A stretch of DNA of 64,000 nt from Octopus sinensis (taxonomy: Eukaryota): contig NC_043011.1 of the NCBI RefSeq assembly GCF_006345805.1, positions 32,996,464 through 33,060,463 on the forward strand, in the 5' to 3' direction. This document shows, piece after piece, positions 28,108 to 59,700 of this stretch. Every line of letters begins with the position of its first letter. Within the stretch, counting starts at the first letter, position 1. The notes below the pieces were generated by a model, which saw only the letters and a list, made by a program, of their open reading frames with translations, made no database searches and was not told where the DNA came from. The translations under genes were made by a program, and so were the position numbers.

Positions 28108-28250
28108 ATATATATTACAACAAAATTTTACATAGGGTCACCCAAGGTTTTGAAACCTTGGGTGACCCTATATAAAATTTTGTTGTTATAATTACTGCTC
28201 TGGTTTTCAGAGTGTGCTTGTTTCTGACATATGTGTTTTTGTTAACTCTT

Positions 28251-28300
<50 letters not shown>

Positions 28301-32599: not shown

Positions 32600-32654
<55 letters not shown>

Positions 32655-34651: not shown

Positions 34652-34701
<50 letters not shown>

Positions 34702-37124
34702 CTTGTGATATCATGGTTGTAAATTAGCATCACCTTCATGTAAGAGATGTCCATTTCTTATCTTCCATGAAAAACTTGTTTGGCCATAGGAGCAGGTGCG
34801 GGCTGGTGACAAGGACATCTGGCTGTAGAAAATCTGCCTCAACAAATTCCGTCTGACCCATGCAAGCATGGAAAAGTGAACGTTAAATGATGACGACGAT
34901 GATGATTAGTCCTTACATTCTGTTGGTGTTATCATTTATTTATTTTTTTTTTTCATTCCCTTCTATGGTTATGGTTGGGAAGATAAGCTGATACCCACCA
35001 CTTTTACAGGGTTTTCTGTGACTGATGAGATTGATTACGTTGCTGTTACAAATTGGATTTGGAGGGTGGGGGAATGTGTGTGTGTGTATGGGAACTAGAG
35101 GATTCACACCAAGAGGAGGAAGGAATGCGAGTAGTGGTTAGTCTGGAGCTTGTGGGTAGGGAGATGCAGAATGAATACTGAAACAGTGGCATGCACCTAG
35201 ATTGCTAGCTCTGTGGAGCAGAGACTGTTGTATCAAAATGCGTCAGGGATGGAGATTGGAGTTAAATTGATGACTTCTTCTTTGTCAAATCATTTGAATG
35301 GCTTTCTTTTGGATGTTTTTGTCAAGAAGTAGTGTTGTTCCAAATGTAGTAGGAGTACTCCATTGTGGATCTCATTTGAGATTTCTTGAGAGTCAGCTGC
35401 TGTTCCAAGTCTGAAACATTTATTGACTCTAAAAGCTAAGCCTTTGTAAAAATGTGTAACACACATTAATCAAATTCATTTGTGGCAGATACTAGTGGCA
35501 CGTAAAAAAGCACCCCAGTGTCATGCAAATGACTCTCGTGCTGGTGGTACATAAAAGCACCCATTACTCTCTTGGAGTGGTTGGCATTAGGAAGGGCATG
35601 CATCCATAGAAAGCCATTCCAAATCAGACTGGTGTCTGGTGCAGCCTTCTAGCATGCCAGTCCAGCCAAACCATCCAACCCATGCCAGCATGAACAACTG
35701 ACATTAAATGATGATTTGTTACATGTAAATTATTCAGAGAAAAATGAAAATTTTGTTCAATGTATCTTACAACATTTTAATACATTAACTCTTTAGCATT
35801 TAAACCAGCCATATCCAACCCAGATGTTCTATTTATTTTGCTGTTCAAACCAACCAGATCCTGTCTGTTACACCTACCCCACAATATCATTCTAAAATTA
35901 AATAATTGCTTCATTGACAGCTTGAAGCTATGAGATAAGGCATGATTAATTCAAAACAATGTGAATGAGTAAACATTACATCTGACAGTTATGTGAACCG
36001 AAAAGGGTTAAAACTGAAGTCATTCTTCTGTCCATCATAGGAATCCAATTTTCCATGTACTCTTGCTATATATATTATATCACAGTATGTGTGTGTATAA
36101 TGACTAATTTATACATATCCACAATTCTCAAGGATGGTCATGCATTATGATATTTTGCCTGGAGCTCACGTATAAATGGACTTAGTTTTTTGTATTTAGG
36201 GTTTTCCATACATTTTTAATCTTTTCATAAAAGTGAAAGGATTTTGTCGATTTATTTATTTCCACTGTCCACCTATATAAATCACAGTAAGTTTGTGTAT
36301 AATGACTAATGCTTACATTTCCACAATTCTCAACCAGTTTTCACCAAACTTTACACATACACTACTTATGACCCAACAATGGCCATGCACTATAACATTT
36401 TACCTAGAGCTCCTATGTAATTGGACATAAATGGACATAGTTTTTTTTTGTATTTAGGGTCTTCCATACTTCTTTAATCTTTCTATAAAAGTGAAAGGAT
36501 TTTGTCTATTTATTTAAACAATCCAAGGGCTGCAGATTTTAGCAAAGTGATCTATATTTGATTCTCACAATCAGCCGACCTAATTATGCATTTCACTACT
36601 CACAGTTTTGAACTGCTAAACATTATTATTGCCCTTCCTTAACTTGAATCTTAAACATTAAAAACTTCATTCATTCATTTCTATACGTACATACTTTTTT
36701 GAATGCCCGTTACTCCAATAATTCTGCATTTTTACAGTTATACTTTTCCATGACAATAAATATGCTTTTTATTCCACAACATATTTGTTGTGGCTTCATG
36801 CAGGCTTAATATGGATTCATTCCTCAATTGCCAGATTTCACTTAACACTTCAACAGCGCTTTTCTCACGGTAAAACAATAGATTTTCTGTGAATGACAGC
36901 AGTTATACATTTCTCAGATGCCTTTGCCAAGCGGAATAATGTATTTGCCTCTCGCCAACCTCCAACAATCTCTCGCCACTCCAGCTGACAGTTTTTTGTA
37001 CTTTTTCATGATGGAAAATACACCTTTTGTGGCAGTTATAATGAAATTGCTTTCTTTTATCAGAGTAATAAGGCGTTTCAATAGAACATCTTTACCCCCG
37101 GGAATTACCGGGTTCACCAGCTAG

Positions 37125-37155
<31 letters not shown>

Positions 37156-38112
37156 CTTTATTCTTTTACTTGTTTCAGTCATTTGACTGTGGCCATGCTG
37201 GAGCACCGCCTTTAGTCGAGCAAATCGGCCCCAAGACTTATTCTTTGTAAGCCTAGTACTTATTCTATCGGTCTCTTTTGCCAAACCGCTAAGTTACGGG
37301 GACGTAAACACACCAACATTACTTGTCAAGTGATGTTGGGGGGACAAACACAGACACACAAACAAAACATATACACATACATATATATACGACGGGCTTC
37401 TTTCAGTTTCCATCTACCAAATCCACTCACAAGGCTTTGGTTGGCCCGAGGCTATAGTAGAAGACACTTGTCCACACACACACACACACACACACACACG
37501 CTATCTATAGATTCTACTTCATATTACTTGATATAGATTTAACCAGTCAGAAATTTAGCACCTTAATTATTCAACCAATGAATTTCTCTTATTTCTTGTC
37601 ACTAACTGTCTTATTTTTTTTAATGTACTATTTTGTTTGCAAAAAGTTTGGTAGAATTAGATTGTCACTACTTCTGTATTTAAATATGTGAATCAGAAAA
37701 TGTATGCAAAAGTTCTTCATAATTTTATTTTGATACGGTTAGCACAGCAGGCTGTCCTTGGATTGTAGAGTGATCTGCTGTTCTTGAGGAGACCTATTGA
37801 GTCAAGTACGTCAACACCAACATCAAAATAAAAATCAAATGGAAACTGTAGTTAAGATACCTGTGCCAGTGGCACGTAAAAACACCATCCGAACGTGGCT
37901 GATGCCAGCGCTGTCTGACCGGCGTCCGTGTCTGTGACACTTAAAAAGCACCCACTACACTCACGGAGTGGTTGGTGTTAGGAAGGGCATCCAGCTGTAG
38001 AAACACTGCCAAATTAGACTGGAGCCTGGCGCAGCCTCCTGGCTTCCTAGACCCTGATCGAACCGTCCAACCCATGCCAGCATGGAAAACGGATGTTAAA
38101 TGATGATGATGA

Positions 38113-38159
<47 letters not shown>

Positions 38160-39464
38160 AAATCATATATCGTCATCATTTAATGCCCATATTCCATATT
38201 GGTGTGATTTGGACAGTTTGAAAAGGATCCAGTGGGTTCATGGACTTCACTGTGGTTGAGTGTCTGCTCTGGTACAGTTTCTACAGCTGCATGCTCCTCT
38301 TAATGCCTACTAATCTGCAGGTTTCCTTTTTCATGCCATCAGCTCTGCTAATGTTGCCATGCAGCTTGCAAGTCTACTAAGCCCGAAGAAATAGTGGGTG
38401 CATTCTTATGTTAGATGGAAGTTGAAGTCCTTTTGTAGAGGAGCTACATGGCTACTCATGTTAAAGAGAGAGAGAGTGAAACACACATGCATTCAACTGA
38501 ACACTCAGTGTATTTGATATATACCTGCAAATTGTATTCAATTCAGTGTTTTTAACTAATATTATTGTTCACATTTAATTGCCATACATAATTCTTCTTC
38601 ATGGTTGACCTCTTTCATTTGCCAGTACTTACTGTATCTTTATATATTTATGTGTGTGTATCATGTTTGGATTAACTATATATACATACATACATACATA
38701 TATATGTTCTTTTCTCGTTAATATTATTAGACAGTTAAAAATGTATTTTCTTTATAGCAGCAGCGGGAGGTATATGTGAAAGATTTCAACCGTTCCCCGA
38801 AGGTACAAAGAAAGTTGATAAGAGCTTAAACACTGGAGTTGTAACCCTTGTCAATTTTAGGCAACGAGTTCCTCCAAAAGTTTCTCAGTTAACATTTGCC
38901 CATGAAGTTGGTCATAATTTTGGGTCACCGGTAAGAGTTCTTTTGTCTTTTCTTCTTCTTCTTCTTGCTTCTGTTCTGTTACGCTGTTGAAAGTAGTATG
39001 CTTCATGTCTGAAATCCATGTCTGACCTTTAATATCCTACCTGTTCCATGTTCAAATGGCTAAATCCAGCCCTCTTACATCTACAATATTATTCTGAAAA
39101 TAAAATATCACATCATCAACATTTCGAAGCTACAGGATAATGCATGATTCACTCAAAACAATATGAATAAATAAGTATTACATTTGACAGAGTAATCTAA
39201 ATGCTAAAGAGTTAAGCCTACTAATTTATTGAAATTAGATCAAGAAACCATTTTTACAAAATGCTCAACAATAAGGGTATTATTTAAAATCTATAATGTT
39301 TATTGCTCAGTTTTGCTCACATGTAGCTGCTACATGAGTCAGGGATACATAGTCATATGTAGGTAGGTCTTTGTCAAATGAATGAAAAATTATGCAACTG
39401 TTTTATGAGAGCTTCCGAGTAGAATAGTATTAAAACATTGACACATTTCAATTGAGAAACAACA

Positions 39465-39500
<36 letters not shown>

Positions 39501-41053
39501 GTGCAGGTGTGGCTGTGTGGTAAGAAGCTTGCTTCCCAGCCACATGGTTCTGGGTTCAGTCCCACAGTGTAGCACCTTGTGAATGGACAGAAACTGAAAG
39601 AAGCTTGTCTGGCTTACTTTGCAGGCTCTGTAGGGTATACTGTTTTCAGTTCTTTCACTCTGAATTATTTCCTACTGAAAGTTTCATTCAGCTGCATTTA
39701 ACGCTAATCTGCTCGAGTGTTAACTTCATTTAGTTTGTGTGAATGGGATGTAAAAGCTCTGTTGCACTGTTGTTCCTCTTCCTGTCCTTCAAAGAAATAG
39801 GAATTTAGGCAGAGGATATATAGACGTAGATAATCAGCTGTTTATCTTGGAGTTTAGTTAACGCCAGCTTTAAAATAATAACTATTAAATTTAGAATTTA
39901 TACCTTTCACCTGCCTGTCGTCTTATATACTTCTGGAATCCATAGGTCACAATTTGTCTCTAGTTTCTGTGGCATTCAGGGGACATTGGATAAGTCTCCC
40001 GCTGAATCAATCATTAAACTTAACTTGACAGTGTGAACTGAACTAACCACTGCAAAGCAATCATCTCTCAGTTTTACTGGTCAGAGTGAGTCTTTATGTG
40101 GTCACTCTTGAAAATAGCAACCAGATCTCTTTCAAGTAACACCCATTTAACAAAACAAGGCTCATGGTTATAACAGCCTTTGTTGAATCAGGACTGGTTT
40201 TGAGCTAAACAACAACTATGCATTCAATATTTACTGTTAACTGAACCACTTTACAGTAGTAACTGTGAAATAAAACATTTTATAATCTTTTGGTTATCGA
40301 CACAATACAATGCTGGTGATTTTATGGGTTCAATCATTTTCGTTCTCTCTTTCTCCACCTCTGTCTCTCACTCCCCTATTTTGAGATTTTGGTATTGTCT
40401 TGAGTATTTTCATAGCAAAAATATCAGAAATATTATATAACTTTTGTTTGTTTGTTTGTTTTTACAGCATGACAAAAGTGTGGAATGTGCTCCATATGGC
40501 TCAGAAGAAAAAGATGCAAATGATGGCAATTATATTATGTATGCTAGTGCCACCTCTGGTGATAAGAAGCACAACAGTATGTTTTCACCTTGCAGCAAAG
40601 ACAATATTACACGAGTACTTGATGCTGTTATCAATTCAAAGAATGGGAAAAAAAATTGTTTTGTCCGTGAGTAAAACTGAGAATTTTTTTTTTGTTATTT
40701 TCAAATTGGATGAGATCCTTTACTATACTCAGAATGAGTTTATTTTGTCAACCCTTAACATATGAGATCTGAAAAAATGCAATGATATATGGAGGTTGTC
40801 TAAAATCACTAAGCAGTTTTGGAAGAAGGCTTCAATCTTATTGCATGATACCTTGGGCAAGTGTCTTCTACTATAGTTCGAGACCAACCAAAAACCTTGT
40901 GAGTAGATTTGTGTGATAGAAACTGAAAGAAGCTAGTTGTATTTCTGTGTGTTTATGTATATTATGGTATTGATTAGACTATCAGATGTTATACTTCACT
41001 GGTCACAATGCCTTTTGCATTGTTTCAGCCTTTGCATAGTGCCACTCCACTGG

Positions 41054-41095
<42 letters not shown>

Positions 41096-44000
41096 CTGTT
41101 TTATTATAGAGAGGATCAACAAAAAAGTTCTCCAGCAGTGAGAAATATAATTTAATGTACACAATATTTAAATATGTGCTACTAATAGTTTCATGCTGTG
41201 GAAACAATAATTCAGCAGATTTATATAATGTGCTTTGTGTTTTCAAACAGTCCTTCAGGCTCAATACATATGATTTATTTTATTTGAAAAACACACACTG
41301 GTCTCTGAGAAAACACAGTTTTTACAGCTGGATGCCCTTTCAAACACCAACTACTTTACAGTGAGCTTTTACTAATTGTTTTCAGTACTTGTGTGGTCAT
41401 GTGCTGACATAGCCACACTGTTAGCCCTTCCACTCTTGACCCAGTGGAATATTCAGGATGTGATAGCTGGGGAGAAAGAGAGAAGACTGCATCAGTACTA
41501 GGCTGGTCTACTTTTCAGCTGAGTGACCTGAACCAATGTAAAATGAAGTGCCTTGCTCAAGGACACAACCTACTGCCTGATCCAGGCAAATAAGCCTACA
41601 GTTTCAGGACTGTGAGCTCCAAATCCTAACCATTAGACCACACACCTTCACACAACTCATACTCTACAGAAATACCACCCAATACTATAGAGTGAAAGTG
41701 CATGACTTAATGGTTAGGGTGTCGGACTCGTGATTGTAAGGCTGTGGTTTCACCTCCTGGATTGGACAATGCTTTGTGTCCTTGTGTAAAACACTTCATC
41801 TCATGCTGCTCCAGTCCACTCAGCTGGTAAAAATGAGTAAAACTGTAATGGACCGGTGTCCCATCCAGGAGGAATACATACACCTGGGAAACTGGTCCTA
41901 TACTCCTTACTGAGTAATGTGGACCAACCAATATGAATAAAACTCACACGGTACATGTTCTATACAATCACCCCCCACACAACACATACTCCTACATAGT
42001 TGATGAATGAACAGTCTAATACACACCATCACCAACTCACATACTACACAATTGCCACTCCAGTGATGTAAAACAATTCACATAGGCTGTACTTTATACC
42101 AGTGGAACAATATTAACCATGTCACTCTGACTCCCTGTGTTTAATGTATGTGACATCCTTATTAGCATTTTCTTTTTCTTTTTTTTGCCAGTTGATGTTA
42201 ATTTAACCCTTTAGTATTAAAACTGGCCATATCTGACTGAAATATTCTACCTCTTTTATGCTTGCACCTACCCTATAATGTCATTGTGAAAAATAAAACA
42301 ATCACTTGATCAAAATCTTGAAGTCACAAGACAGTGCATGATTAATTTAAAACAGCATCAGTGAATAAGCTTTGCATTTGAATAAAATGACTGCTAAAGG
42401 GTGAAATTGAAGACATTACAGCTTTCCTAATCATACTGTCTATGATACTTTGGTTGGAAACCATTGTTCTACACATTCACTTTCGGACTCTGTAAGACAT
42501 ATAACACAAGTGACACTTCACATATGAAATACAGTCATCATGCAACAATACATCACAACTCCTGTACACCTACTTTACACCGGAAAAAGAAAAAAAACAG
42601 ATGAAACACTAGAAACATCAAAACAAATCTTGCCACAAATGAAACATGTCTTGAACAAAACACAATCCTGCCCTCTCAAAAGACACTAATCACCACCTTA
42701 AGGTCATAGAGGGGCACTAAAAGCTCATGTGTAACTGTTGAAAACATGATGATACCCCTCATGTTATACTTGTTTCAGTCAGTGGACTAAGGCCATGCTG
42801 GAGCACTGCCTTGAGGGGTGTCATTTCAACAAATTGACCCCAGTACTTACTTTTGAAACCTGGTACTTATTCTTTCGGTCTCTTGCCGAACCACTTAGTC
42901 ATGGGGGTGTAAACAAACCAGCACTAGTTGTCAGATGGCATTGGTGGTGGACACTCACATACACATACACAGACACACACACACAATGATGAACTTCTCT
43001 CATTTCTGTCCACCAGATTCACTCACAAAGCTCTGATTGGCCCAAGGCTACAGAAGACACTTGCCCAAGGTACCATTCAGTGGGACTGAACCTGGAATCA
43101 TGTAGTTTGGAGGCAAACTTCTCACCACACAGCACCTATGCCCTCTTCCATTTCACAGACTATCTGTAGTACTTTATTGTTGATGATTGCTCTAATACAT
43201 ATATGTTGTACAATGGCACCCACTTGCATCATATTTATACTGCTAAAATTAATTGCAGTTCATCTTTAATTTTTTTGCAATCATTCATTCTTCATTGTAA
43301 AGCTGCTCTTTTTTCAGCTGGTGTCATTGCAAAGCTGGTCTCTGTCTGATGTTTCCTAATGGGAATCTTCAAATTGTTGCTGACGTTTTTCTTGGTGTCA
43401 GTAAAACCTTTAACATCTGTTGTGTTTTGCCAAATCTATTAATTTTATTTCACTTTTGTATCTGGTTTGCAAGATTCTTTATATGAATTGACTATTAATA
43501 AAAGAATGGAATTGAACCAGTGCATCTGTTAATAATATTGGCATAATGACTCTCCCTAGACACAACAAAATATTAATTTCATCCCAGGATTTAATATAGT
43601 ACTTACTTACTTGTACTTGTGGCGACATTCACCCTGGGCAGGTTGAGTCGGCTTCTTCTACTACCCTTGAGGCATCTCGAACCATGGCAGTGGAAGAAGT
43701 TTCGTGGGAATATGAATTTCACAAGCGGTCCCCAACAATCTCGCATGTAGAGACATCCTGTTTGCCGCAGATTGTCCGCAGAGACAGAACGACCAAGGAG
43801 CCACCGGTTGCCGAAACAGACACTCTGAGGATTTTCACCAGAGCCCCGTCTGCCGGGTTGTGGCCCTATTACCACTTGGTATCAGACCAATCCGCCTTGG
43901 GTGGCCCTACCAGGAACCGAAGTTCCCGACGGCATAACTCTGACACTACTCGTTGCCAGCGTCCCCACTCTACTCCTTATTCTCATAAAGTTGTCCCCCT

Positions 44001-46275
44001 TTTCTTCTTTATGGTTTGTAAACTTGTAGATGGCTTGGTGACCTCACTAGTGCTGGTGGCACACACACACAAAAAAGAAAAGCACTCAGTCTATGCTGTA
44101 AAGTGGTTAGCATTAGGAAAGGTATCCAGCCATAGAAACCATGCCAAAGCAGACATTGGAGTTCGATGCAGTCCTTAACTCCATTGGATCCTGCGAAGTT
44201 GTCTGACTTTTGCTGGTGTAGGATATAGATGTTTAATGATGATGATAAGTTACTTTCCACTGATTTTTTTGCAATATTTTTCATATTCTATAGACAGCAC
44301 AGCAGCGTTCTGTGGTAACAAGCTTGTTGAGGGAGATGAGCAATGTGACTGCGGTTATGAAGAAGACTGTATTAATAATAAATGTTGTCATTACCGTGGT
44401 AGCAAGGAAGGAAAGCAGTGTACTTTGAAAGCAGGTGCTAATTGCAGGTAATTCTTTAACTTGACTACAAACTATTTATGGTGTTGAAATGGTAGAACTG
44501 ATAAAATGCTATGGCCAAAAAAGCCTTGTGTTATTTAGCTTTGTCTTTCTACATTCTTAATTGTAACCCTTTTCCTTACCATATTTCTCATGAAATATTG
44601 TCTTTATTTCAACTAATTTTGAAAATATTGAATTTAGTGAAATAACTCTGTCGTTTATTGAGCTGTTGTTTAAAACATGAAGTAACTTAAAATTTTGATG
44701 AACAGTTTAAATTTAGATCTCTTTGATACAAAGTTAGCATCATTGAACCACGAGTGATCTTAATCGAGTTGATATCAAAAGGGTTAAATTCATTGGGAAT
44801 TTCTTATACCTTTCGCTTCTGGATCAATAAACTAAATACTAGTTGCACTCTGGGGATACATTGAATTGATTGTGGCCATCTTTACAAATTTATAGTTTTG
44901 TGCCAATGGAAGAAATTATTATTATCTACAGCAAAACTTTACGATTCTAAATACATTCATGCAAAAAATATTTTAATATTCTAAACTACTTAGTAAATCA
45001 TACTGCAAAGTATGTCATATGATTTTAAATGATTATCTAGTCTCCAACAGGCAGGTGAAAGACAACAACTCCTGAATATTGTGAGAAAAGCAAAAGCTCA
45101 TCTATTATGGCCATATTTGCAGAAGCAGAAGACTGGAAAACATTATCATGCAAGGAAGGGTAAAGGGTAGTATATCAAGAGGCAGACAGAGAACACTGGA
45201 TGGACAATATCAAGCTGGTTGGTCAAGAGTAGCAAGGCTGTTGGAGGACTTGCACTTAATTGGGAAGACTCTCATTGGAGTGCCACCATTGTGCTGCAGG
45301 CATACAATACATGGCGAGTCTCATCTCAATAAAAATGTCTATATATTCAGGAAGTTCCTATGATGCCTTGCTATCAAATAGTTATATTTCGTTATTTTAA
45401 TGTATCCACATCAATAATGGAAATTTTAAATAATTGTGTTTCTATTGAGTATTTTCCAGCTGCAAATAATTATTTTCTCTCTATTTCAGTGAAACATCAG
45501 GTCCTTGTTGTGATGGGTTCAAGTGTGGGTTCATAACTGATAAATTGTGTCATAAAGAAGAAGAACAAGGATGCACTTACAATTCTTCTTGTGAATATCC
45601 TTTATTGTGTGTGATTATAGTTTAGTTTTTGGTCAGTATTATATTCTATGATGATGATGGTAACTTCCTGGAGAACTGAGCCTGAAATCTAACTTGATTA
45701 TTGATTAATAACCATTTTGTTCTATTTTCATCGCATTGCAAATGCTTTTGTCATAAAGAAAAACACTCACATCCTCTTAATTCAACTTTGAAAAAATAAT
45801 TGGTGCTTCATACTAGTATATATTAAGCAGTTTTCTAAAACTTTTATTAGTCATGTTATGAAGGGAGTTAATTTCAATCTCAACCAACCATGTTGTTACA
45901 TTGGACAAACATAACATCCGTATTAAGTTGGATATAAAGATTCCCTTTTGGTATTAATATTGTTTCTGTTGCTATTAATTATCTTTTTAATACACCCACT
46001 GACTGTTTGTACACATTCCAACCCCACCTTCCCTATACATCCCATCCCTTACACACCACCCTTGCTTCCCCCACACCCCATCACCACCACACCATGCAAT
46101 ACCACACCCCCATACCACATCACATCACATCACACCACCCCACCAGAATGCTGCACCATGCTCCAATCTGATCTGGCAAAATTTCTACAGCTGGATGCCC
46201 TTCCTAGCGCCAAGGATGTCCTTCCTAATGCCAAAGGATGCCCTTCCTAATGCCATGGATGCCATTCCTAACACC

Positions 46276-46327
<52 letters not shown>

Positions 46328-49300
46328 GTATTTGTGTTTGTTCCCTCACCACTGCTTGACAACCGATGTTGGTGTGTTTACATCCCTGTAGCTTAGCAGT
46401 TCAACAAAAGAGACCAACAGAATAAGTACTAGGCTTACAAAGAATAAGTCCTTGGGGCGATTTCTTTAACTAAAGGCATTGCTCCAGCATGGCTGTAGTC
46501 AAATGACTGAAACAAGTAAAAGAAAAGAAATAAAAGAAAGGTTGATAGACAGCATAAAAGCCATTTTGTGGCTCATTTTTCCTTACTGTGGTGATGACTG
46601 TGTCCAGTGCTACAGAAAAATTATTTTAATTCAAAGTATTTTGATTTCAAATCCTTGCCATAATTTTCTATACTTTGGTAAAACTAAAGCAGAATCCATG
46701 TACAACTGCATAAAATAGTTATAGCCTTTGATTATCTTTGTAAATTATATTTGTTGCTGTTTGAATTGTTTCTGTGATATTCTTGTAAAACCATTGTGAG
46801 TTTCATTTTTCTTTAACTGTGTCTCACTGGTAAACGTGCGACTTGTCCAACTCCATCTTTCAAGAAAAACGAAACACTGTGCAACCACAACAGCAAAATT
46901 TGTCTCGATGGTGTAAGTAATGACATTCTATCTTTCATTTTAACTTTATTGTAGAAATACACAGCTTTAACCTTAAGGATTTCAGATTATTCTGTCAAAT
47001 GTAATGCTTATTTATTCACATTATTTTGGATTTATCCTGCACTGTTGTAACCTTGATATTTCAATGATGTAATTGTGTATGTTCAAAATGACATTCTAGA
47101 GTAGGTGTGAGATATTGGATCTGGCCAGTGTGATCATAAATTCTTCTTCTTGTCTTGTGCCCTTTTCAAGCCTAGCCAGGCTCATGGGCCCGGTTTCCCG
47201 GTTTCTATTGCGTATGTGTGTCCCCCACCCCCCAGTTGGACGGGACACCTGTCCATCACAGCATTACTCAAAAAGCAGGAAGAAAGAGTGAGAGAAAGTT
47301 GGGGCGAAAGAGTACAACAAGGGTCACCACCACCCCCTGCTGGAGCCTCGTGGAGCTTTTGGTGCTTTTGCTCAATAAACCCACACAACGCCCGGTCTGG
47401 GAATTGAAACCGCGATCCTCCGACCGCGAGTCTGCTGCCCTAACCACTGGGCCATTGTGATCATAAAGTAAGTAGAATATTGTGGCCAGATATGGCTGGT
47501 TTAAGGGCTAAAGAGTTAATTAAATGTCTGATAAAACATTTCACACACTGAAACATTTCGTAAGTCAGAAATAACTGTATTGATGTCTCATCAGATGAAC
47601 CAATATTTGATATGGCAGGGCATCAAAATTCTCTGAGAAATGATCTTTCTCTATGGGAAGTAAATGAGAAGATAGTATCTTTTCCTCCTTTCTTCCTCCC
47701 TCTACCTCTCTCTGTTTGTGTGTGTGTGTTTAGAATAAAAAGCTTCCCCCTCCCATTCTTCACTGTCTCCCTTCCTCTACATCCCTCAGTTGTCTCTGTC
47801 TTTCTCTCCCCTTTTTTTGCATTATTTCTTCTCCTCCTTCCTCCCATTTTCTGTCTTTCACTTTTTACTGCACTTCTCTGTCCAATATTGCTATCATTTC
47901 TTCTTTCTCTTCCTTTCATTTGTGGCATTTCATATATTTTGTTTACTTGTCTAATTTTCTCATCTATAGCTTTATTTTATCTTTTATTGTAACCTTAACT
48001 TCTAAATGTGGAGGCGCAATGGCCCACTGGTTAGGGCAGCCGACTCGCGATTGCAGGATCGTGGTTTCGATTCCCAGACCGGGCATTGTGAGTGTTTATT
48101 GAGCGAAAACACTTAAAGCTCCATGAGGCTCTGGCAGGGGGTGGTGGTGAACCCTGCTGTACTCTTTCACCACAACTTTCTCTCTATCTTTCTTCCTGTT
48201 TCTGTTGTACCTGTATTTCAAAGGGCCAGCCTCGTCACACTCTGTGTCATGCTGAATATCCCCGAGAACTACGTTAAGGGTCATGTGTCTGTGGAGTGCT
48301 CAGCCACTTGCACGTTAACAAATGAGCTGCGACGTCACTGGTGCCAAACTGTATCGGCCTTTGCCTTTCCCTTGGATAACATCGGTGGCATGGAGAGGAG
48401 AGGCCAGTATGCATGGGCGACTGCTGGTCTTCCATAAACAACCTTGCCCAGACTTGTGCCTGGGAGGGTAACTTTCTAGGTGCAATCCCATGGTCATTCA
48501 TGACTGAAGGGGGTCACAACAACAACTTCTAAATATAAATACCCAATTTTGCAGTCCTATTATTCCTTTTAATTATTTGCAGTTTCTATTTTTTGGATAT
48601 TTTCTATTTTCTATTTTTTACTCAGTCTTTTCTAAATTTAATTATTGATTATTGTTTATTTCGTTATTAACATTGACTCCCTCTGGCAGTGGGAGAAGAG
48701 GACAAGAAGAGAAGAGTAAATAATAAGGGGAATGGAATGGAGAAAGAGACAAATTTAGTGTTGTGAACACTGTTGTGAGTAATGCTATGTGCCAAAAATA
48801 ACTGTAAGTTGAAGTCGAGTTGAAAGGGCAAGACAGGCAAAAAGTAGAAAAGTAAGACCAATTAAAGCTTAACTCTTCCGTTACCATATTTATTTTGAGA
48901 TGCTGTTTTTCTTTCAATTAATTTTAATTGAAAAAAAAAATTTAGTAAAATAACTTAGTTATCATTAAACTAGTGTTAGGAACATAAATTGTGACTAAAG
49001 TTTGGTAGAAGATTTTAATTCAAAACTTATGGAAATGAGACATTTGTACTACAGATCCATAGGTGGTTTCAGCTGGGTTGGTATCGAAAGGGTTTAGAGA
49101 ATCTTATATAAATTATGCCTTACACAATTTTATCTCAAAATATATATAAAACAAACAAATGAATTCATGGACACTAACACTCTACTTGCGAAGACCTGTT
49201 GAGGCAAGTGGAATCAAAATCAAAATCAAATTCGATGACTGGCGTCTGTGCTAGTAGGGTGCAAAGAGCACCATACGAGTGTAATCATTGACAGAGAGGC

Positions 49301-52300
49301 TAACCGGCTTCTGTGCCAGTGGCACTTAAAAGGCACGATTCGAGTGTGATCGTTACTAGCGTCGCCTTACTGGCACTCGAGCCCCGTGCTAGTAGGGTAT
49401 TAAGAGCACCATCCGGGCATGATTGTTGCCGGAGCGGATATCTGGCCTCTGTGCCAGTGGCACGTAAAAGACACCATTCGAGCATGATCGTTACCAGCAT
49501 CACCTCACTGGCATCTGTGCCGGTGGCATGTGTAAAAGATTCAAGCAAGGTCGTTGCCAGTACCGCCTGACTGGCCCCGTGCTGGTGGCATGTAAAAGCA
49601 CCCCCTACACTCTCGGAATGGTTGACGTTAGGAAGGGCATCCTGCTGTAGAAACTCTGCCAGATCAAGATTGAAGCCTGGTGCAGCCATTTGGTTCGCCA
49701 GCCCTCAGTCAAATCGTCCAACCCATGCTAGCATGGAAAGCGGACGTTAAACGATGATGATGATGATGATTTCTAGAATATTGAACCATGTTCCCTTACT
49801 CTATACCAACGTTTTTCAGAGGCCTTTATGCTGGTGCTAGTTCAGGGTTACTTATTGGCAAACACCTTAAATTTTGGTTAAACAGATTCACATTAATCTC
49901 TAAAGATGTTCAATTTTTGCTGTTTCTTTATTTTCATCCTTTTTTTCTTTCAGCATTGCATTGGATCTGTGTGTCGCAGAATTAAATGGGAGGAATGTTT
50001 TCTAACACCTCCTCAGAATGATGAAGACTTTGACCGTGAACTACTCTGTTACGTTTCTTGTAGTGCGTATTATCCTTCATATTATCCATATCAATATCAA
50101 ATGATCATAAAACGTTTTTATCAATTTATTGTTTTAGCTTGAAGTGTACGAATAAATTTATGTAGTTATCATCAGCAGCAGCAGCACTAGCTGCATTATA
50201 ATTTTACATTGTTTTTTTTTTTCTTTTGTTTTTCTTTTTCTGGGCTGGTATGGGTTGGATGAATCTGCTGCAATGCAGCTTCTCATTCATTACTTACTAC
50301 CATTCCTCTCCATGACTTCCAGCATCCAGACATCAGACCTTACACTGTCTTCCTTTTCTTTCATTGGTTTTCTCTTAAATTTTTATTTTTTTAATTTTTA
50401 GAGGATCTTTACTTATTTTGTGTCTGAACCTGCCTAGATATATGATGAATCTTGGCATTGTACATAGTGAAGGCGCATGGCTCAATGGTTAGAGCGTCGA
50501 GCTTACGATCGTGAGGTTGAGAGCTCGAATCCCGGACCGGGCTGCATGTTGTGTTCTTGAGCAAGACACTTTATTTCACGTTGCTCCAGTTCACTCAGCT
50601 GTAGAAATGAGTTGCGACGTCACAGGTGCCAAGCTGTATCGACCTTTGTCTTTCCCTTGGATAACACTGGTGGCGTGGAGAGGGGAGGCCGGTATGCATG
50701 GGTGACTGCTGGTCTTCCATAAAACAAACTTGCCCAGACTTGTGCCTCAGAGGGTAACTCTCTAGGTGCAAACCCATGGTCACTCATGACCGAAGGGGGT
50801 CTTTACCCTTTACATAGTGCCAATAACTATTCCATATCAGTTGGCAGATATAAGCACTAATCAGCGAACGGTTTGTTCACTAAAAGTATAAACTAAGGCC
50901 TGTTACTTAGCTAGACTATTGTTTGGGCTACTTCTGATTGATGAGACGTGTTGAAACACTGGTGTCCCAGGATCCTCTGCGACAATGAGTCACGTGTGTT
51001 GAACACACTATCGTCATAAAAAAAAGATTTTCTTTTTTGACATACATTACAGTAACTATCATATTTTGTGTTCAAATCTGCCTGGTCATATTATGAATAT
51101 GTATACGTAGAAAGCACATTTCAAGCATTGGGCTTCATGGGGGCAATGACAAATGACTGAGAACTTTGGCAATATGCCATGTTTGGGAAGAAGACCCATC
51201 AAGCCAAGTGAAATGGGTCAGATGGAATTTGCCAAGGCAGATCTTTTATTGTTTGCTACTCTTCCTGTCACCAAGCCTTACCTGTCTCCAAACTGTAATA
51301 TTTCCCCATAGCTAGACATGTTTTTTCATGGAAGACTGGAAAGAAACAGCTTCAATTGCATGGCAATGAAGCTCATTTACTACCATCATGTGATGTGTAA
51401 CCAAGGGTACACACACACACACACGGTTGCTTTCAGCTTCCATCTGCCAAATCCACTCACAAGGCTTTGGTCAACTTGGAGTGACAGTAGAAGACACTCA
51501 CCCAAGGTGCAGCGCAATGAGACTGAACTCAAAATTACATGGTTATAGAGCAAGATTCTTAACCACACAGCCATGCCATAAATGAGTCTGATGGCTTCAA
51601 TACTTTTGTTGTGATAAACATTTAGCTGCATGTCTATGTATATCATGTATACCAGTAATTTTGTGGGTATATTGGTGACAGTCGTTTTTGAGTGGTTCAT
51701 CTTCTAGTAATGTATTTAAAATATGTAAACAGTTATATCATTCATTTATGATATGGTACTTTTACTGCAATTTTATTGCAGTAATCCTCAGTAATGGATG
51801 AGATATATTTTTTTTTGCAACTGGTGCTTCAAACAGTACCAAAGGGATGTGATAAACCATAGTCCTGTACAAGACATTTGAATAACACCAGTGTATAGTC
51901 TTATTTCTCTCAATTTCAGTAAGGATTGTGTATTGTTGATAATGATTGGTGATACGTATGAAAAGAGCCAGCTTGATAAAAATGACTGCGATAATTGAAA
52001 TACTAAAATGAATGAAATCAGTGCTAATATAATCTTAGAGACAGATAGGTTGATATAAAAAAATGGGACTTCTGTCTTAAAACAAATCTCATCGTTTTCA
52101 CTATCACTCCATATTCACACTTTCATCATGATGTGATGTCATATATGTTTTGTCTAAGTGTATTAAAGCAACAGGTAACTTGTGTTTCAGCCAAGACAGG
52201 AAAAGAATGCATTAGCTCCAAAGATAGAGATAAGGTTAAACTACCTGAAAATATACAATTTCACAATCTACTTAAAGAAATTAACCAAAATATTGACTAT

Positions 52301-55300
52301 GCTCCATTGAAACTTCCGGCAGGTAAGTAAATATTCTGATTAAATCACTTCTGTTTGTTTCATATGTTACTTTAATCCTTTAGCATTTAATCTGGCCCAA
52401 ATATTCTGTCTGTTTTATATTTGGACCAGACAGATCTGGCCTTTCACATCTATCCTACAACAAGTCATTCTAAAACTACACAATGACTCAATCAAATTCT
52501 TGAAGCTGCAAGATAATGAATGATTAATTCAAAACAATGTGACTCAATAAGCATTATATCGGACAAAGTAATCTGAATGCTAAAGGGTTCTGGTGAAAAG
52601 ACAGTTAATTGTCTTTAAAAAGATAGATAAATAGAAAATTGACATAATTGATATTCAGTTTCAATTTATTGAGAAGCCTCTTAAGCATAAACTGATGTAG
52701 TAGTTCTTTTAATTTTATCATTATTTTCATGTCTTAAACATAAAACACTGACCTTATTTAGCAGAGGATTGTGGATAACTGAGTTGATAAAAACCAGACA
52801 ACTAATAGTTATATTTTGATATTGCATTGTATCCAGGACCTTGGCATTTAGTTTTCAACAAAACCCTAGATAGGTACTCTAAGTGGTATAATACACTCTG
52901 TATGTAGGCTGCATTGTTGAATTGAGAATTATTTTTTGTTAGTTTACAGCTCTCTTCTATTTCATTGGGAAAAGCTACCTATGAGAAATTAGTATCATGT
53001 CCAAAAAAGTATTTCCTTGTTCTACTTTATGCTATAGAAAAGTGGAGATAAACATCATTTCTGAATATCCTTGATAGCATGCAGATGTTCAAAAAAGAAC
53101 AGTTTGCTACAGCTACATTTGAAATGCTCTGACCACTGCTATGTTCTTAATGTAGCAGTTATTACTGTTCTGTCAGTTCCAGTCAACTATTGAATTTGTA
53201 ATACCATTAGCATGGACTATTGAACAACTTACTCATGAAGTCCATTTTTGATGCTGACAACAATGGACAAGACATAAAACACAGAAAAAGCTAACTAAAA
53301 TGGGTTTCAGTCACATTGTTATACATGAGTTGCTGGCAAAATTTGGATGTCAGTTCATGTGTATTGGACAACACAATTCAAAAATGGACCACCCACTTGT
53401 CTTTCTTCTCTGCAAATAACTAACTGTGCAGCTTGTCGAAAAGGAAAGCATATTCCCTTTACCTAACTAAAAAGTAATTTCTATATTGATAGCTTCAGTG
53501 GCACATTTTCTCTGTTGCTCTCATATTCATTGTTTAGTAATGAAAACGTGGTTATTATTAGGTTGTCCCAAAAGTTCGTAAACACTTGAGAAAATTGAAT
53601 TTTTACTCACCAAGTACTAACAAAAACAACAAAAATTATTCCTCAAAATAAAGACCATTATTTTCCAAGACTTTCTACGAACTTTTGGGACAATCTTATA
53701 TTTCAAGCAATTAAGGCAGCAAGATGGCAGAATCGTTAGCATGTCAGACAAAATGGTTAGTGGTATTTCTTCTGGCTTCTTACATTTTCAGTCCAAATGC
53801 CAATGAGGTCGACTTTACCTTTCATCCTTTCTAGGTTGATAAAATAAGAACTGTTTGAGCACTGTGATTCATGTAATCAACTAACTTTCACCTTCTAAAA
53901 TTGCTTGTCTCATATCAAAGCTTGAAATCAGTTCTCAAACATTAAATTTCAAATGTAAGTAAATGTATCCGAATAAATAAAAACATTTGCCCCTCTCTTG
54001 ACATCTTGGTTTGTTGCTACATTAGCTTATATGTCTATTCACTTATTCGTTGTGTTATAACCATATTTCTAAACAATACACCGTCACCATTACTTTTTAT
54101 TCTTTCACTCCCATCAGTTATTGGACTGTGACTACACTTGCGTACCACCGTGAAGGGTTTAGTTAAATAAATCGACCTCCAATATATTTATTTTCTTAAA
54201 TTTATGTTTGCTGAACTGCTAAGGGGACATAAACAAACCAACACTAGTTGTGGAGAGGTGGTGAGGGACACACACAAAAGTACACAAACACACACACACA
54301 CACATGATGGGTTTCTACACTTTTTCCATCTACCAAATTCACTTACAAGGCATTGGTAAGCCCAGGGCTATATTAGACTTCAAATCATTTGATTGCAAAG
54401 TGAACTTTTTAATCACACAGTCATTAAGCTATTTAACTTCTCATCTTTCCTTTCAATTTCTTTATTAATTCCCTCCCCACCACTCTCATTTCTGATCTCC
54501 TATTGTAATTCAATGATCATTTTGTTTGTGAAATCTAAATACACTAACTATCTTTGGAAAAGGTAAAAAGAATACACATTCTGTAATGTTGTCTACACGG
54601 CTCTCAAAAGACTAATGGTTATGGCTTGAATGTTTTGATCATTGGTCTGGAAGCACTCCGTCGGTTCCGACGATGAGGGTTCCGGTTGATCCGATCAACG
54701 GGACAGCCTGCTCATGAAATTAACGTGTAAGTGGCTGAGCACTCCACAGACACGTGTACCCTTAACGTAGTTCTCGGGGATATTCAGCATGACACAGAGA
54801 GTGACAAGGCGGGCCCTTTGAAATACAGGTACAACAGAAACAGGAAGTAAGAGTGAGAGAGAGTTGTGGTGAAAGAGTACAGCAGGGATCACCACCATCC
54901 CCTGCCGGAGCCTCGTGGAGCTTTTAGGTGTTTTCGCTCAATAAACACTCACAACGCCCGGTCTGGGAATCGAAACCGCGATCCTACAACTGCGAGTCCG
55001 CTGCCCTAACCAGTGGGCCATTGCGCCTCCACGATCATTGGTCTACTCTGAGTTGAACCAGGGCTGCACAATGACAGTAACAACAACAACTAGAAACATA
55101 CAGACCCCCAATAGCGAATAGAAAGAGTTAAACACTTATAGTATACAAATTATTAACTACAATTCTCTGGGGCTCATAGATTTAATACGTATATAAACAG
55201 TTTGTCTACTTGTTTCTCTGAGATTGGTTAAGTGATGAGACTGCAATAAGAGTTGAAACTTGATTGAGCCTTTAGCATTTAAACTGGTTGTAATTGGCCA

Positions 55301-56706
55301 AAATTTTCTTTTATTTCTACTTTTCAAACTTTCTACTTTTCAAACTGGCCAAGTCTGGCCCTTCACACCTTACCTACAGTGTCATTCTAAAAATAAACCA
55401 TTACATCTTCAAAATCTCAAAGCTACAAGATAATGTAGGATGAATTCACAACAATGTGAATAAATAATCACTATATTTAACAGAGTAATCTGAATGCTAA
55501 AGGGTTAAGGCCGTCATTTTCCAATCTCCAAAGAAATAGGGTAATTTGACCTGTTTGTGTGTCTGTTATATAGGTTTACAAATATTAAAAGTAATTATTT
55601 CTACGCATTTAGTTCCATCTGTTATGTAATTTCTCTTAACAGGATCTCCATGTGATAACTTCCGTGGCTACTGTGATGTCTTCCATCGATGTCGACGAGT
55701 AGATGCGGAAGGACCCCTGGCTCGTTTGAAGAATTTGATATTTAACCCTGAAACTCTTCAAACAATCAGAGAATGGATTATTGTATGTATTACTTTTTAT
55801 AAGCTGCTTTATGTAAAGTATATATGTGCATGCACACACACACGTAAGCAAATGAAAGAAAGTAGTACTTAACACATTTAGTGTTGAAGTTACAGGTATT
55901 TAGCTGTTTAACTCAGCTCCACATTACTTGAAGTTTCTTTTTTTATACCCTCAGAACTTTGATATGAAACCAAGTCGAACTGTTACCCCCCACACATTCA
56001 CACACACACACGTTCATGCTGGATCATATTAAAATGTTGCTGAGTAGAATCTTTCAACCAAATTTCTGTACAACAGTTGTTTAAAGTCAGTTTTGTTTTA
56101 GTAAGAATTTCATCAGCTGCAATAGTTCCGTATTTGAAAATTAATTGCTCCATAAATCTAAGATTGGTGTCAGAATTGTCATATGTAAGCGGCATTAACA
56201 GAATGAAAGGTTTTTAAAGATTATTAGGTATTAGTGAAAAGATAAAAAAGTTCAGTTCCTGATATTTTGAGATGCCCTTGCATAATATTTTATGCAGTGG
56301 AATTATAATTTTTCAGCATTGAGAACAGTTTGTAGAATTTTATAGTTAGATAATTTTGGCAAGAGGGTATGTTTTCTATTTTAAAGTGTACATAGAAACA
56401 GCATCTAGTTTCTAGTTGTGTTTCCTCTCATATATATATAAACCCTTAATTTGCATTATTTACATTTGACAGATATTTGTCCTCATCTTGTTTGTTGTTA
56501 ACACAACGTTTCAGCTGATATACCCTCCAGCCTTCATCAGGTGTCTTGATGAAAATTTCGAACCTGGGTTCTCATTCCTAAGGTATTTTTCATCGGCGGC
56601 ATTCAGGTCACTGCCTGGAATCGAACTCGAAATCTTGTGGTTAGTAGCCCACACTTTTAACCACTACGCCATATACCAAGATTTCGAGTTCTATTCTAAG
56701 CAGTGA

Positions 56707-56742
<36 letters not shown>

Positions 56743-59700
56743 TAATAATGATGACAATGACAGCTCCACCGCCTTAGGAATGAGAACCCAGGTTTGAAAT
56801 GCCCCAAGACACCTAATGAAGGCTGGAGGGTATATCAGCCGAAACGTTGTGTTAACTAACAACCAACAAGATGAGGACAAATATCCGTCAAATGTAAATA
56901 ATGTACATAATTCTTCATCTCTTAAATATGGAACTGTATAAACACTTAATGTGTTACCTAATATAAAACACTCAATGTCTAACTTAAAGACACTATTATT
57001 TGCAATTCAGTTGAGAAAAGACTAACTTCTTAATTGCTTAATTAAAAAAAGTCTTTAATTAGATAATTAAAGTGAGAAGGACTTTATATATATATATTCA
57101 TACACATACATACACAGATATGACAGAAGTAAATAGACATCCTTCTAATCATTAAAATCTATTTAAATCTAAAATTATACATTCAAATTATTTATTAATT
57201 GTTAGAATGTGAATATTTGATATTTAATAGACGTGCCCTTTGCATTTTTCAATGCAAGGACCCTATTAGGCATGGTACTGATTATGACTAATAGTCTCTT
57301 GTGGAATTTCTTGCCAAGTTTCAAGCAGTAATTGCAAAAGATCTGGCTTTGATGATGCTTTCTTGCTCTTTTTATGTAGTGTCCTGTCCATTATGTCCCA
57401 GAGATGTTCAATAGGGTTCATATCTGGTGACTGTCTTGGCCATGGAAGCTTTTTGATGCCATTCTCATGCAACAAATCTTGGGTCATTATAACCGTGTGA
57501 CAAGGAGCCCTGTCTTCCATAAATAAAAGTCTTTAATCGGTTCACCACTGGAGAAGATTGGAAGGAGTCCTTTCTGCAATATGGACATGATTATCTGAGT
57601 TAATGTTTCCCCCACACTCCACCAGCTCTGATCAACCATTGCTCCAAATTGCTCCACAGACCATCACAGAATAGTTGCTGTGTTTCATTGTTGGCTGCAA
57701 TCTTTTCACATCAAATTCTTGATCACAGGGTCTCCAGACCCACACTCGACCACTCTCAGGAAATACAGCAAACCTGACCTTATCAGAGAATATGACAGTG
57801 TCCCAAAATGCTAGTAGCCTCCACCATCTCAACTGGCCCAATCTTTTCTCTGCTTGACATTGGCTGGTTGAAGAAGTGGCTTCCTTCTTGCTGCTCTGCA
57901 ATAGTAACCAAGTTTGTGGAGATAACTGATACCTGTTCTGGGACTGACATCAACTTGTTCTGCTATGTCAGAGGCCTTGCAATGAGGATTATCCTCCACA
58001 CTTCTCTTAACAAAGAGAAGGGTCCTGTCAGAGGGCCCTGGTTGATCTGGGCAAGGTGATATGAACTCCTTTCTCTGGTGAATTGCACAATCACTCTATA
58101 AACTGTAGAAAATGGGATCCCAAGGTTTTCTGTGATTTTGTTATGTCCACCTTCAGAATGACCCACAATTTGTCCTCTTTGAAATTCAGACAGTTCCAAG
58201 GCTTCTTTTGTACATGGCATGATTAAACAGTCACATATAGAACCTGAAACATAAATATGTCAATTAATAAAAAAAATTTAAACCTTTACAAGTCAGAATA
58301 AACATAAAACAATGTTTTATGGGATGTCTATTTACTGCTGTCATGTATGTGTGTGTATATAAAAAGACAAATACAGGGGTTGGACAAAATAATGGAAATA
58401 CCTTAAAATTTCAAACAAATTTATTTTAACATGTGGTAGGATTGCCTTTGGCAGTAATTACAGCTGGAATTCTATGAAGTATGGACTCATATAAAGTTTG
58501 AATTGTTTCCAAAGGAATTTTTGTCCATTCCTCAGCTAAAACAGTCTCCAGTTCTTATGGTGGAGGATACCGACTCCTTACTTGTTTTTCTAAAATGCAC
58601 CATAAATGTTCAATAATATTGAGATCTGGGGACTGTGATGGCCAGATAAAATGTTCAACATTCACTAGAATGTTCCTCATGCCATTCAGTAACAACTTTA
58701 GCTGTGTGAATTGGTGCATTATCATCCTGAAAGATTGTTTCCCTCCGGAAACAGTTCCTCAACCATAGGATGAATTTGATCACATAAAATGCTTAAATAG
58801 TCTTGACTATTAATTCTACCATGAAGGGAAACCATTGGGCTGGAGGATTTCCAAGATATAGCCCCCCCCCCCCCCGATCATCACAGATCCTCTTCCATGT
58901 TTAACAGTTGGAAGAAGGCAGTCTGAGTCAAATGCTTCTTTTGGCTGTCTCCACATGTATACTTGGCCAGTGATTGAAAATGAGGTAAAGGATGACTTGT
59001 CCAAGAAAATAACATTCTTCTACTACTCTAGGGACCAATTCTGTAGGTTTTTATTCCACTCAAAATGCTTTGCAACGTTTGTTTATGAAAGTAGTGGTTT
59101 TCTGATTGCAGCCCTCCTGTGAAATCTGGCTTTGTGCAGCTTCCAGCAAACAGTTTTTGTGGAAACTGGCTTCTCAAGGTGGTCATTAAGCTTTGCAGTA
59201 ATTTGGAGAGCTGTACTTTTGTGATCCTTTCCAACAATTCATGTAAGAGTCTGATGGTCCCTATCTAAAAGTTTTGGTTTTCTTCTGGAGTTTTGTTTTG
59301 ACAAGGAGGTTATTCCCTCTTTCTCAAAGGCTGTCATTACTTTCAAGGCAGTACTTCTTGATACACCAAACATTTTGGTTGTTTGTGTTATGACCAGTTT
59401 GAAAGCCCAATAGATCTCATTTTAATGAATTTTAATTACCTTTTTCTGATGATATCTGAGAAGAAACAACAATTTTAGCAAAACATATTAAGCAACACTA
59501 TAATAAGTCAAAAAACATTAAAATAAACAAGCGTTTGAAGGTTTTATTGCTATTTCGAAGTTATGATGCTATGATGGTTCCATTATTTTGTCTAACCTGT
59601 GTATATAAAATAAAATTACATGTTGCATATATATTACAAATTTAATAATTATTTTGTTTTTGTTTTCAGTGTTATAATCTTGTGAAAGTTTTATTCTATG

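What the first reader, a model, noticed from the sequence alone, without database searches (positions are those of the whole stretch)
45595..46827. Minor-spliceosome AT-AC intron splitting the ADAM10 disintegrin domain
Seen: ATATCCTTT donor, TTCTTTAAC branch site about 10 nt before AC, no pyrimidine tract. The nearby GT (45591) and AGs (46800, 46864) do not restore the frame. Retention reads [11 protein letters not shown] and would truncate the protein before the TM, giving a secreted protease or an NMD target. From memory, human ADAM10 encodes this stretch in one exon (c.1512-1695), so this is either an ancient U12 intron lost in vertebrates or a rare U12 gain. Established: U12 introns can be rate-limiting, which here would gate the Notch/APP sheddase. 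GT-AG-only gene predictors will mis-model it.
Basis: partly seen in the sequence, partly recalled or inferred. Interest (0 to 1): 0.75.

Follow-up and report, generated by a model that had tools for sequence, protein, structure and literature searches.

The report
Ancient minor-spliceosome intron in octopus ADAM10
The octopus ADAM10 protease gene has one intron of the rare U12 (AT-AC) type; it is real, public gene models already include it, it sits at the same spot in molluscs, an annelid, a horseshoe crab and a sea urchin, and it is absent in a bird and a lamprey, so it is an ordinary old minor intron.

Summary
Window 45595-46827 (+) is a 1233-nt AT-AC intron. Its donor ATATCCTTT matches the U12 consensus at 9 of 9 bases. 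Its branch box TTCTTTAAC puts the branch A 11 nt before the terminal AC.

It is the only non-GT-AG intron among the 16 introns of ADAM10 in the window. It is also the only junction that reproduces the orthologous protein. With it, exons 2-18 translate 825/825 identical to Octopus sinensis RefSeq XP_029645681.1, so the public model already uses this junction.

An AT-AC intron with the same ATATCCTTT donor and a CCTTRAC box lies in the same codon and phase in:
- Argonauta
- Haliotis
- Pecten
- Owenia
- Tachypleus
- Strongylocentrotus
- one unidentified metagenome contig (two more show the donor only)

The intron therefore dates at least to the bilaterian ancestor, and "rare gain" is refuted. A bird encodes the stretch in one 184-nt exon. 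A lamprey has only a GT-AG intron 10 nt downstream. Human and mouse minor-intron lists lack ADAM10.

Regulation by slow splicing or retention is untested. This is a correct finding of low novelty. In passing: a U11 snRNA-like sequence, probably a pseudogene, lies in another intron (31578-31695).

The parts
9077..62788 (+). ADAM10 gene of Octopus sinensis, coding exons 2-18. Exon 1, about 43 codons, lies upstream of the window.
   Evidence: tblastn and a spliced alignment give 17 exons. Their translation is 825/825 identical to XP_029645681.1 (P0420). Pfam finds Reprolysin, Disintegrin and ADAM10_Cys-rich domains.
45490..45594 (+). Exon 12 (105 nt), encoding (S)[34 protein letters not shown] plus the first two bases of the D605 codon.
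   Evidence: Upstream acceptor ..ctctatttcag|tgaaac.
45595..46827 (+). U12-type AT-AC intron, 1233 nt, phase 2.
   Evidence: It is the only junction giving 0 mismatches to the orthologue, and the only non-GT-AG intron of the 16 in the window. It is homologous to AT-AC introns in six other species.
45595..45603 (+). U12-type 5' splice site ATATCCTTT, the element bound by U11 and later U6atac.
   Evidence: The same nine bases are present in all seven species compared.
46809..46817 (+). Branch-site box TTCTTTAAC, the U12 snRNA pairing site. The branch A is 46815 or 46816, 11 nt from the 3' end.
   Evidence: It differs from the consensus TTCCTTAAC by one C-to-T change. The six orthologues have CCTTAAC or CCTTGAC 9-13 nt from the AC.
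46826..46827 (+). Terminal AC of the intron.
46828..46912 (+). Exon 13 (85 nt), encoding the third base of the D605 codon plus [28 protein letters not shown].
   Evidence: Downstream donor gatggt|GTAAGT.
46193..46331 (.). Repeats inside the intron: a 21-nt tandem repeat (3.7 copies, 46193-46271) and a (TA)n tract (46277-46331).
   Evidence: Beyond the first 10 nt, the intron interior does not align with Argonauta except at the TA tract.

Best explanation
Window 45595-46827 is a genuine U12-dependent (minor-spliceosome) AT-AC intron of the Octopus sinensis ADAM10 gene. It interrupts codon D605 in the disintegrin domain, in phase 2.

Mechanism, taken from established knowledge of U12-type splicing and not tested here: the U11/U12 di-snRNP binds the ATATCCTTT donor (U11) and the TTCTTTAAC branch box (U12) together. 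U4atac/U6atac.U5 then joins and U6atac replaces U11 at the donor. The branch A, 11 nt upstream of the AC, attacks the donor, and exons 12 and 13 are joined to read ..NSSC-D-GKRATC...

The intron is ancestral. It was present at this exact site in the last common ancestor of protostomes and deuterostomes. It has stayed U12-type in molluscs, an annelid, a chelicerate and an echinoderm. It is absent from this position in the vertebrates sampled, a bird and a lamprey. If it is not removed, the reading frame stops after 11 codons, upstream of the transmembrane segment.
For: Shown in the window:
- The donor matches the consensus 9/9. The branch box has one mismatch and lies at the typical distance. 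There is no pyrimidine tract, and the termini are AT-AC.
- It is the unique junction with 0 mismatches, and all 15 other introns in the window are GT-AG.
- The spliced CDS is 825/825 identical to RefSeq XP_029645681.1.

Shown in other species, same codon and phase 2, with ATATCCTTT and a CCTTRAC box 9-13 nt before the AC:
- Argonauta hians, Haliotis rufescens, Pecten maximus and Owenia fusiformis.
- Tachypleus tridentatus.
- Strongylocentrotus purpuratus.
- Unidentified metagenome contig L038, a complete AT-AC intron.
- Metagenome contigs L036 and L037, donor only because the acceptor was not examined.

mRNA-level support (inferred): in a related cephalopod protein cluster (P0003, no species name given), contigs of 2.9-4.5 kb carry uninterrupted ORFs of about 875 aa that read ..DSKC-D-GFQAKC.. 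across the site.

Loss: a bird has a single 184-nt exon. A lamprey has no intron at the site. ADAM10 is missing from the human/mouse minor-intron-gene tables.

Organism: O. sinensis is among the species with minor introns surveyed in PMC10639083.
Against: - No RNA-seq reads from O. sinensis were examined here, so use of the junction rests on the RefSeq model and on conservation.
- The octopus branch box is the weakest of the seven (CTTTAAC instead of CCTTRAC).
- A cryptic in-frame GT-AG pair exists (donor GT at 45611, acceptor AG at 46863/64, preceded by a pyrimidine-rich stretch) and could be used at some level.
- Dependence on the minor spliceosome is inferred from sequence only.
- Pre-bilaterian age could not be tested, because the Trichoplax ADAM10 gene is intronless.
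Confidence: 0.93

Rival explanations
1. The two exons are really joined by the major spliceosome through a nearby cryptic GT-AG pair, for example a donor at 45611 and an acceptor at 46864. The AT-AC reading would then be a coincidence of motifs.
For: Seven in-frame, stop-free GT...AG combinations exist. The 45610/46865 pair keeps a Cys-x-Cys-like pattern, and its acceptor follows a pyrimidine-rich stretch. ATATCCTT alone is not rarer than chance in the window.
Against: - Every such pair removes all or most of the [12 protein letters not shown] block, which is conserved from octopus to bird (C-x-G-x3-C-P).
- None reproduces the RefSeq protein.
- The identical AT-AC architecture recurs at the same codon in six other species from four other phyla.
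Confidence: 0.02
2. The intron is a recent, lineage-specific U12 gain in cephalopods.
For: None was found beyond its absence in vertebrates.
Against: The same position, phase and splice motifs occur in a gastropod, a bivalve, an annelid, a horseshoe crab and a sea urchin.
Confidence: 0.01
3. Besides being a U12 intron, it acts as a regulatory valve. Slow minor splicing or regulated retention (premature stop, NMD or a secreted ectodomain) would set ADAM10 dosage, and this function would explain why it stayed U12-type for so long.
For: - Retention creates a stop after 11 codons, before the transmembrane segment.
- The U12 type is conserved across Bilateria.
- Some U12 introns are known to be spliced slowly (PMC4615840 and PMC4066798, abstracts).
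Against: - No expression or retention data were examined.
- The intron was dispensable in vertebrates, in several unidentified eukaryotes in metagenomes (L033, L040, L045, L062) and in Trichoplax.
- In contigs L046 and L052 a GT-AG intron sits at the same site.
- No conserved element lies inside the intron.
- PMC10639083 argues from its title onward that much of minor-intron evolution may be neutral.
Confidence: 0.12

Closest known systems
U12-type (minor, AT-AC subtype) spliceosomal introns, as catalogued by intronIC/IAOD (PMC7367187), MIDB (PMC6717393) and the pan-eukaryotic survey PMC10639083
   Same: - ATATCCTTT donor.
- TCCTTAAC-like branch box 9-13 nt from the 3' end.
- No polypyrimidine tract.
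- AT-AC termini.
- Not in phase 0.
- A single minor intron in a gene otherwise made of GT-AG introns.
- Deep positional conservation.
   Different: Nothing structural. The host gene is not a minor-intron gene in human or mouse. I found no paper that mentions a U12 intron in ADAM10 or kuzbanian. The octopus branch box carries one C-to-T deviation.
Documented patterns of U12 intron loss and U12-to-U2 conversion during animal evolution
   Same: - Precise loss in a bird, leaving a fused 184-nt exon with no change in length at the junction.
- A GT-AG intron at exactly the same site and phase in two metagenome contigs from an unidentified, divergent relative (L046, L052).
   Different: The lamprey has a GT-AG intron 10 nt downstream with no change in protein length. 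That does not fit a simple in-place conversion. It could be a loss followed by a nearby gain, or intron sliding. This remains unresolved.
Vertebrate ADAM10 (human, bird) exon covering residues 504-565
   Same: The flanking introns are at the same positions and phases as in octopus: phase 2 in the Ser codon before PSQGPCC, and phase 0 after ..C-x-x-G.
   Different: One exon (184 nt in the bird) where octopus has two (105 + 85 nt) separated by the U12 intron.

Membership tests
U12-type spliceosomal intron (AT-AC subtype) | 5' splice site /ATATCCTT immediately at the exon end | tested here: met
   ATATCCTTT at 45595-45603, 9/9.
U12-type spliceosomal intron (AT-AC subtype) | Branch-site box TCCTTAAC-like, located about 10-15 nt from the 3' splice site | tested here: met
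   TTCTTTAAC at 46809-46817, with the branch A 11 nt from the end. It has one C-to-T mismatch, which I infer would still pair as G-U with U12 snRNA.
U12-type spliceosomal intron (AT-AC subtype) | No polypyrimidine tract between the branch site and the 3' splice site; terminal AC | tested here: met
   Only TGTGTCTC lies between the box and the AC at 46826-46827.
U12-type spliceosomal intron (AT-AC subtype) | Positional homology with U12-type introns in orthologues | tested here: met
   Same codon and phase, same motifs, in six named species and in metagenome contig L038; L036 and L037 show the matching donor only.
U12-type spliceosomal intron (AT-AC subtype) | The junction is used in mRNA | tested here: inconclusive
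   The RefSeq protein is identical to the AT-AC-spliced translation. Transcript-like contigs from a related cephalopod protein cluster read across the site. No O. sinensis reads were examined.
U12-type spliceosomal intron (AT-AC subtype) | The organism has a minor spliceosome (U11, U12, U4atac, U6atac) | tested here: inconclusive
   The literature lists O. sinensis among species with conserved minor introns (PMC10639083). Within the window there is only a U11-like sequence of doubtful functionality.
U12-type spliceosomal intron (AT-AC subtype) | Excision depends on U12/U6atac snRNPs | not testable with these tools
   This needs knock-down or in vitro splicing experiments.
ADAM10 (kuzbanian) orthologue | Domain architecture (reprolysin-type metalloprotease, disintegrin, ADAM10 Cys-rich, transmembrane segment) and the HExGHxxGxxHD zinc motif | tested here: met
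   Pfam finds Reprolysin_2/3/4/5, Disintegrin and ADAM10_Cys-rich. [12 protein letters not shown] is present. The best hits are all annotated ADAM10. The sequence is 825/825 identical to O. sinensis ADAM10 X1.

The most novel reading that the evidence does not exclude
The ADAM10 U12 intron has been held as U12-type since the bilaterian ancestor because inefficient minor splicing or retention tunes the dosage of the Notch/APP sheddase. On this reading, its loss on the vertebrate lineage removed that control. A weaker add-on: the U11-like sequence nested in intron 7 of the same gene (31578-31695) is a working U11 copy co-expressed with a minor-intron host.
Probability: 0.08. Interest if true: 0.5.

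Novelty: new member of a known kind. Interest (0 to 1): 0.2.

Why it matters
It matters little beyond correct annotation and bookkeeping of minor introns.

- It adds ADAM10 to the set of genes whose ancestral bilaterian U12 intron survives in many invertebrates but not in the vertebrates sampled. That makes it a clean marker for dating minor-intron loss on the chordate lineage.
- It is a reminder that GT-AG-only predictors would truncate or mis-splice this exon pair.
- RefSeq already models it correctly, and intron-classification surveys that include O. sinensis should already have scored it.
- A regulatory role in Notch/APP shedding would be interesting, but nothing found here supports it.

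Tried and rejected
- **Alternative GT/GC-AG junctions.** I enumerated all of them around the exon ends. Seven are in frame, and all delete conserved residues.
- **Chance test of the motif alone.** It is not significant on its own.
- **Genomic look-ups that failed.** No record was found for Lingula (P0045), Cryptotermes (P0047) or Pungitius (P0219). All three were isoform X2 or X3 entries.
- **Trichoplax, tried as a non-bilaterian outgroup.** The gene is intronless and therefore uninformative.
- **Literature.** Searches for ADAM10 or kuzbanian together with U12, minor intron or AT-AC found nothing specific. The held supplements of PMC10639083 and PMC7367187 contain no gene tables. A search for human ADAM10 splice-boundary variants, meant to confirm c.1512-1695, found nothing.
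- **Conserved elements inside the intron.** Between Octopus and Argonauta, only the exon plus the first 10 intron bases and a TA microsatellite align.
- **U11-like sequence.** It is not found in the ADAM10 loci of Argonauta, Haliotis, Pecten, Owenia, Tachypleus, Strongylocentrotus or lamprey, so there is no conserved association between U11 and ADAM10.
Full report
**What is there.** The window is AT-rich (about 36% GC). It carries most of an ADAM10 gene on the + strand. tblastn with a vertebrate ADAM10, and then with the best database hit, located 17 coding exons between 9077 and 62788. A junction-by-junction search fixed the boundaries. The spliced CDS translates to a protein 825/825 identical to Octopus sinensis RefSeq XP_029645681.1, ADAM10 isoform X1. 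It has 4 mismatches to O. vulgaris and 46 to O. bimaculoides. The window is therefore O. sinensis ADAM10, lacking only exon 1. Pfam finds the reprolysin-type protease, Disintegrin (residues 531-613) and ADAM10 Cys-rich domains.

**The observation.** Fifteen of the sixteen introns in the window are GT-AG with ordinary pyrimidine-rich acceptors. The intron at 45595-46827 (1233 nt, phase 2, inside codon D605) is the exception.
- It starts with ATATCCTTT.
- It carries TTCTTTAAC at 46809-46817.
- It ends in AC, with the branch A 11 nt from the 3' end and only TGTGTCTC in between.
- It is the only donor/acceptor placement that gives zero mismatches to the orthologous protein.
- If retained, the frame reads ..[13 protein letters not shown].
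- Seven more distant in-frame GT...AG pairs exist, but each removes all or most of the conserved [12 protein letters not shown] block.
- The octamer or nonamer alone is not rarer than chance in 64 kb. The case rests on placement and conservation.

**Comparative evidence.** I fetched the genomic loci of annotated ADAM10 orthologues and mapped each protein back onto its DNA. An AT-AC intron lies in the same codon and the same phase in six species. In every case it has ATATCCTTT at the donor and a CCTTAAC or CCTTGAC box 9-13 nt before the AC.

| Species | Group | Intron length |
|---|---|---|
| Argonauta hians | octopod | 887 nt |
| Haliotis rufescens | gastropod | 1676 nt |
| Pecten maximus | bivalve | 501 nt |
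| Owenia fusiformis | early-branching annelid | 579 nt |
| Tachypleus tridentatus | chelicerate | 297 nt |
| Strongylocentrotus purpuratus | echinoderm | 1721 nt |

One search gives the joint summary. A scan of metagenome contigs added one unidentified eukaryotic contig with a complete AT-AC intron at that codon (L038) and two with the matching ATATCCTT donor there (L036, L037; acceptors not examined). The intron was therefore present, as a U12-type intron, in the last common ancestor of protostomes and deuterostomes. The "rare gain" alternative is refuted.

**Losses and conversions.**
- In the bird Phaenicophaeus curvirostris the corresponding stretch is a single 184-nt exon (L006 43658-43841). 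Its flanking intron positions and phases match those of octopus.
- In a lamprey there is no intron at the site, but a GT-AG intron lies 10 nt downstream in phase 0, with no change in protein length.
- ADAM10 and ADAM17 do not occur in the human/mouse minor-intron-gene tables of PMC6717393.
- Human DNA itself was not examined.
- Several unidentified genomic contigs lack the intron (L033, L040, L045, L062).
- Two contigs from a divergent relative carry a GT-AG intron (about 51 nt in L052) at exactly the same site and phase (L046, L052).
- The Trichoplax gene is intronless, so the pre-bilaterian state is unknown.

**Mechanism.** From the established model of U12-type splicing, U11 pairs with the donor and U12 with the branch box as a di-snRNP. 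U6atac then replaces U11, and the exons are ligated to read C-D-G. This is inferred from sequence. The only evidence here that the junction is used is indirect. The RefSeq model matches it exactly. In addition, transcript-like contigs from a related cephalopod protein cluster (no species name given) carry about 875-aa uninterrupted ORFs on contigs of 2.9-4.5 kb and read ..DSKC-D-GFQAKC.. across the site. O. sinensis is among the species with conserved minor introns in PMC10639083, which also notes a relative enrichment of minor introns in molluscs. The octopus branch box is the only one of the seven that deviates (CTTTAAC). I infer the change is still compatible with a G-U pair to U12 snRNA.

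**What is not supported.** Nothing examined bears on the proposal that slow minor splicing or retention gates the sheddase. The intron interior shows no conservation with Argonauta beyond the first 10 nt and a TA microsatellite. The intron has been dispensable in several lineages. No paper in the held library mentions a U12 intron in ADAM10 or kuzbanian. The novelty is therefore that of one more catalogue entry, not a new kind of feature.

**Seen in passing.** Rfam finds a full-length U11 snRNA match above the gathering score at 31578-31695 (+). It scores 52.4 bits against a threshold of 39 and lies inside the GT-AG intron 31046-31868 of the same gene. It keeps the UCAAGAGAUUU box and a U-rich Sm-like site. 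Several features point to a pseudogene:
- Its 5' end reads AUAGAGGG instead of AAAAAGGG.
- Its Sm site lacks the G residues.
- Its last stem-loop is truncated.
- Several stem pairs are non-canonical.
- It folds no better than shuffled sequence (z = +0.71).
- It is absent from the ADAM10 loci of seven other species.

I regard it as a probable U11 pseudogene or lineage-specific copy and its location as coincidence, but this was not settled.

**Verdict.** The feature is an ordinary, anciently conserved U12-type intron that public annotation already models.

Noticed in passing
window 31578-31695 (+): Full-length Rfam U11 snRNA match (52.4 bits, gathering score 39) inside GT-AG intron 31046-31868 of the same ADAM10 gene, on the same strand. 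It has a variant 5' end (AUAGAGGG), a weak Sm site (AAUUUUUAA), a truncated 3' stem-loop and MFE z = +0.71. It is absent from the ADAM10 loci of seven other species. Probably a pseudogene, but its place in a minor-intron host gene is curious.
   Followed up: partly
window 25635-26767 (+), inside intron 24411-28913: Two adjoining ORFs of 228 and 149 aa. The second has a GIY-YIG endonuclease domain (Pfam E = 4.5e-6). This fits a remnant of a Penelope-like retroelement, which is my inference. No reverse-transcriptase domain was detected.
   Followed up: partly
L008 (lamprey) 26035-27733: The lamprey ADAM10-like gene has a GT-AG intron 10 nt downstream of the ancestral U12 site, in phase 0, with no change in protein length (C-S-G-D-M|V-I-C). 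Either loss plus a nearby gain, or intron sliding after a type switch. Unresolved.
   Followed up: partly
L052 about 6004-6054 and L046 after 11741 (metagenome contigs, unidentified eukaryote): A divergent ADAM10-like gene carries a GT-AG intron (about 51 nt in L052) at exactly the same codon position and phase as the U12 intron (TGC GA|GTATGT..CTAG|T GGT). This is a candidate U12-to-U2 conversion.
   Followed up: partly
L003 (Pecten maximus) 14578-15591 (-): A tandem array of at least 10 type I hammerhead ribozyme motifs (Rfam RF00163, about 36 bits each) in the long first intron of Pecten ADAM10. It looks like a retrozyme or satellite repeat.
   Followed up: no
L004 (Owenia fusiformis) 26080-26574 (+): Five near-identical copies (88-92%) of the first 25 codons of the exon encoding HDSGSACTPYTS..NYIMF, spaced about 84 nt apart, upstream of the real exon at 26978. 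This is a tandemly duplicated exon fragment inside the intron.
   Followed up: no
window 53065-53072 (+): A second ATATCCTT octamer, inside GT-AG intron 52323-55642 of the same gene. It is within chance expectation and was not examined further.
   Followed up: no
L009 (Trichoplax adhaerens): The Trichoplax ADAM10 orthologue is encoded by a single uninterrupted 2271-nt ORF. It has lost all introns or derives from a retrogene.
   Followed up: no
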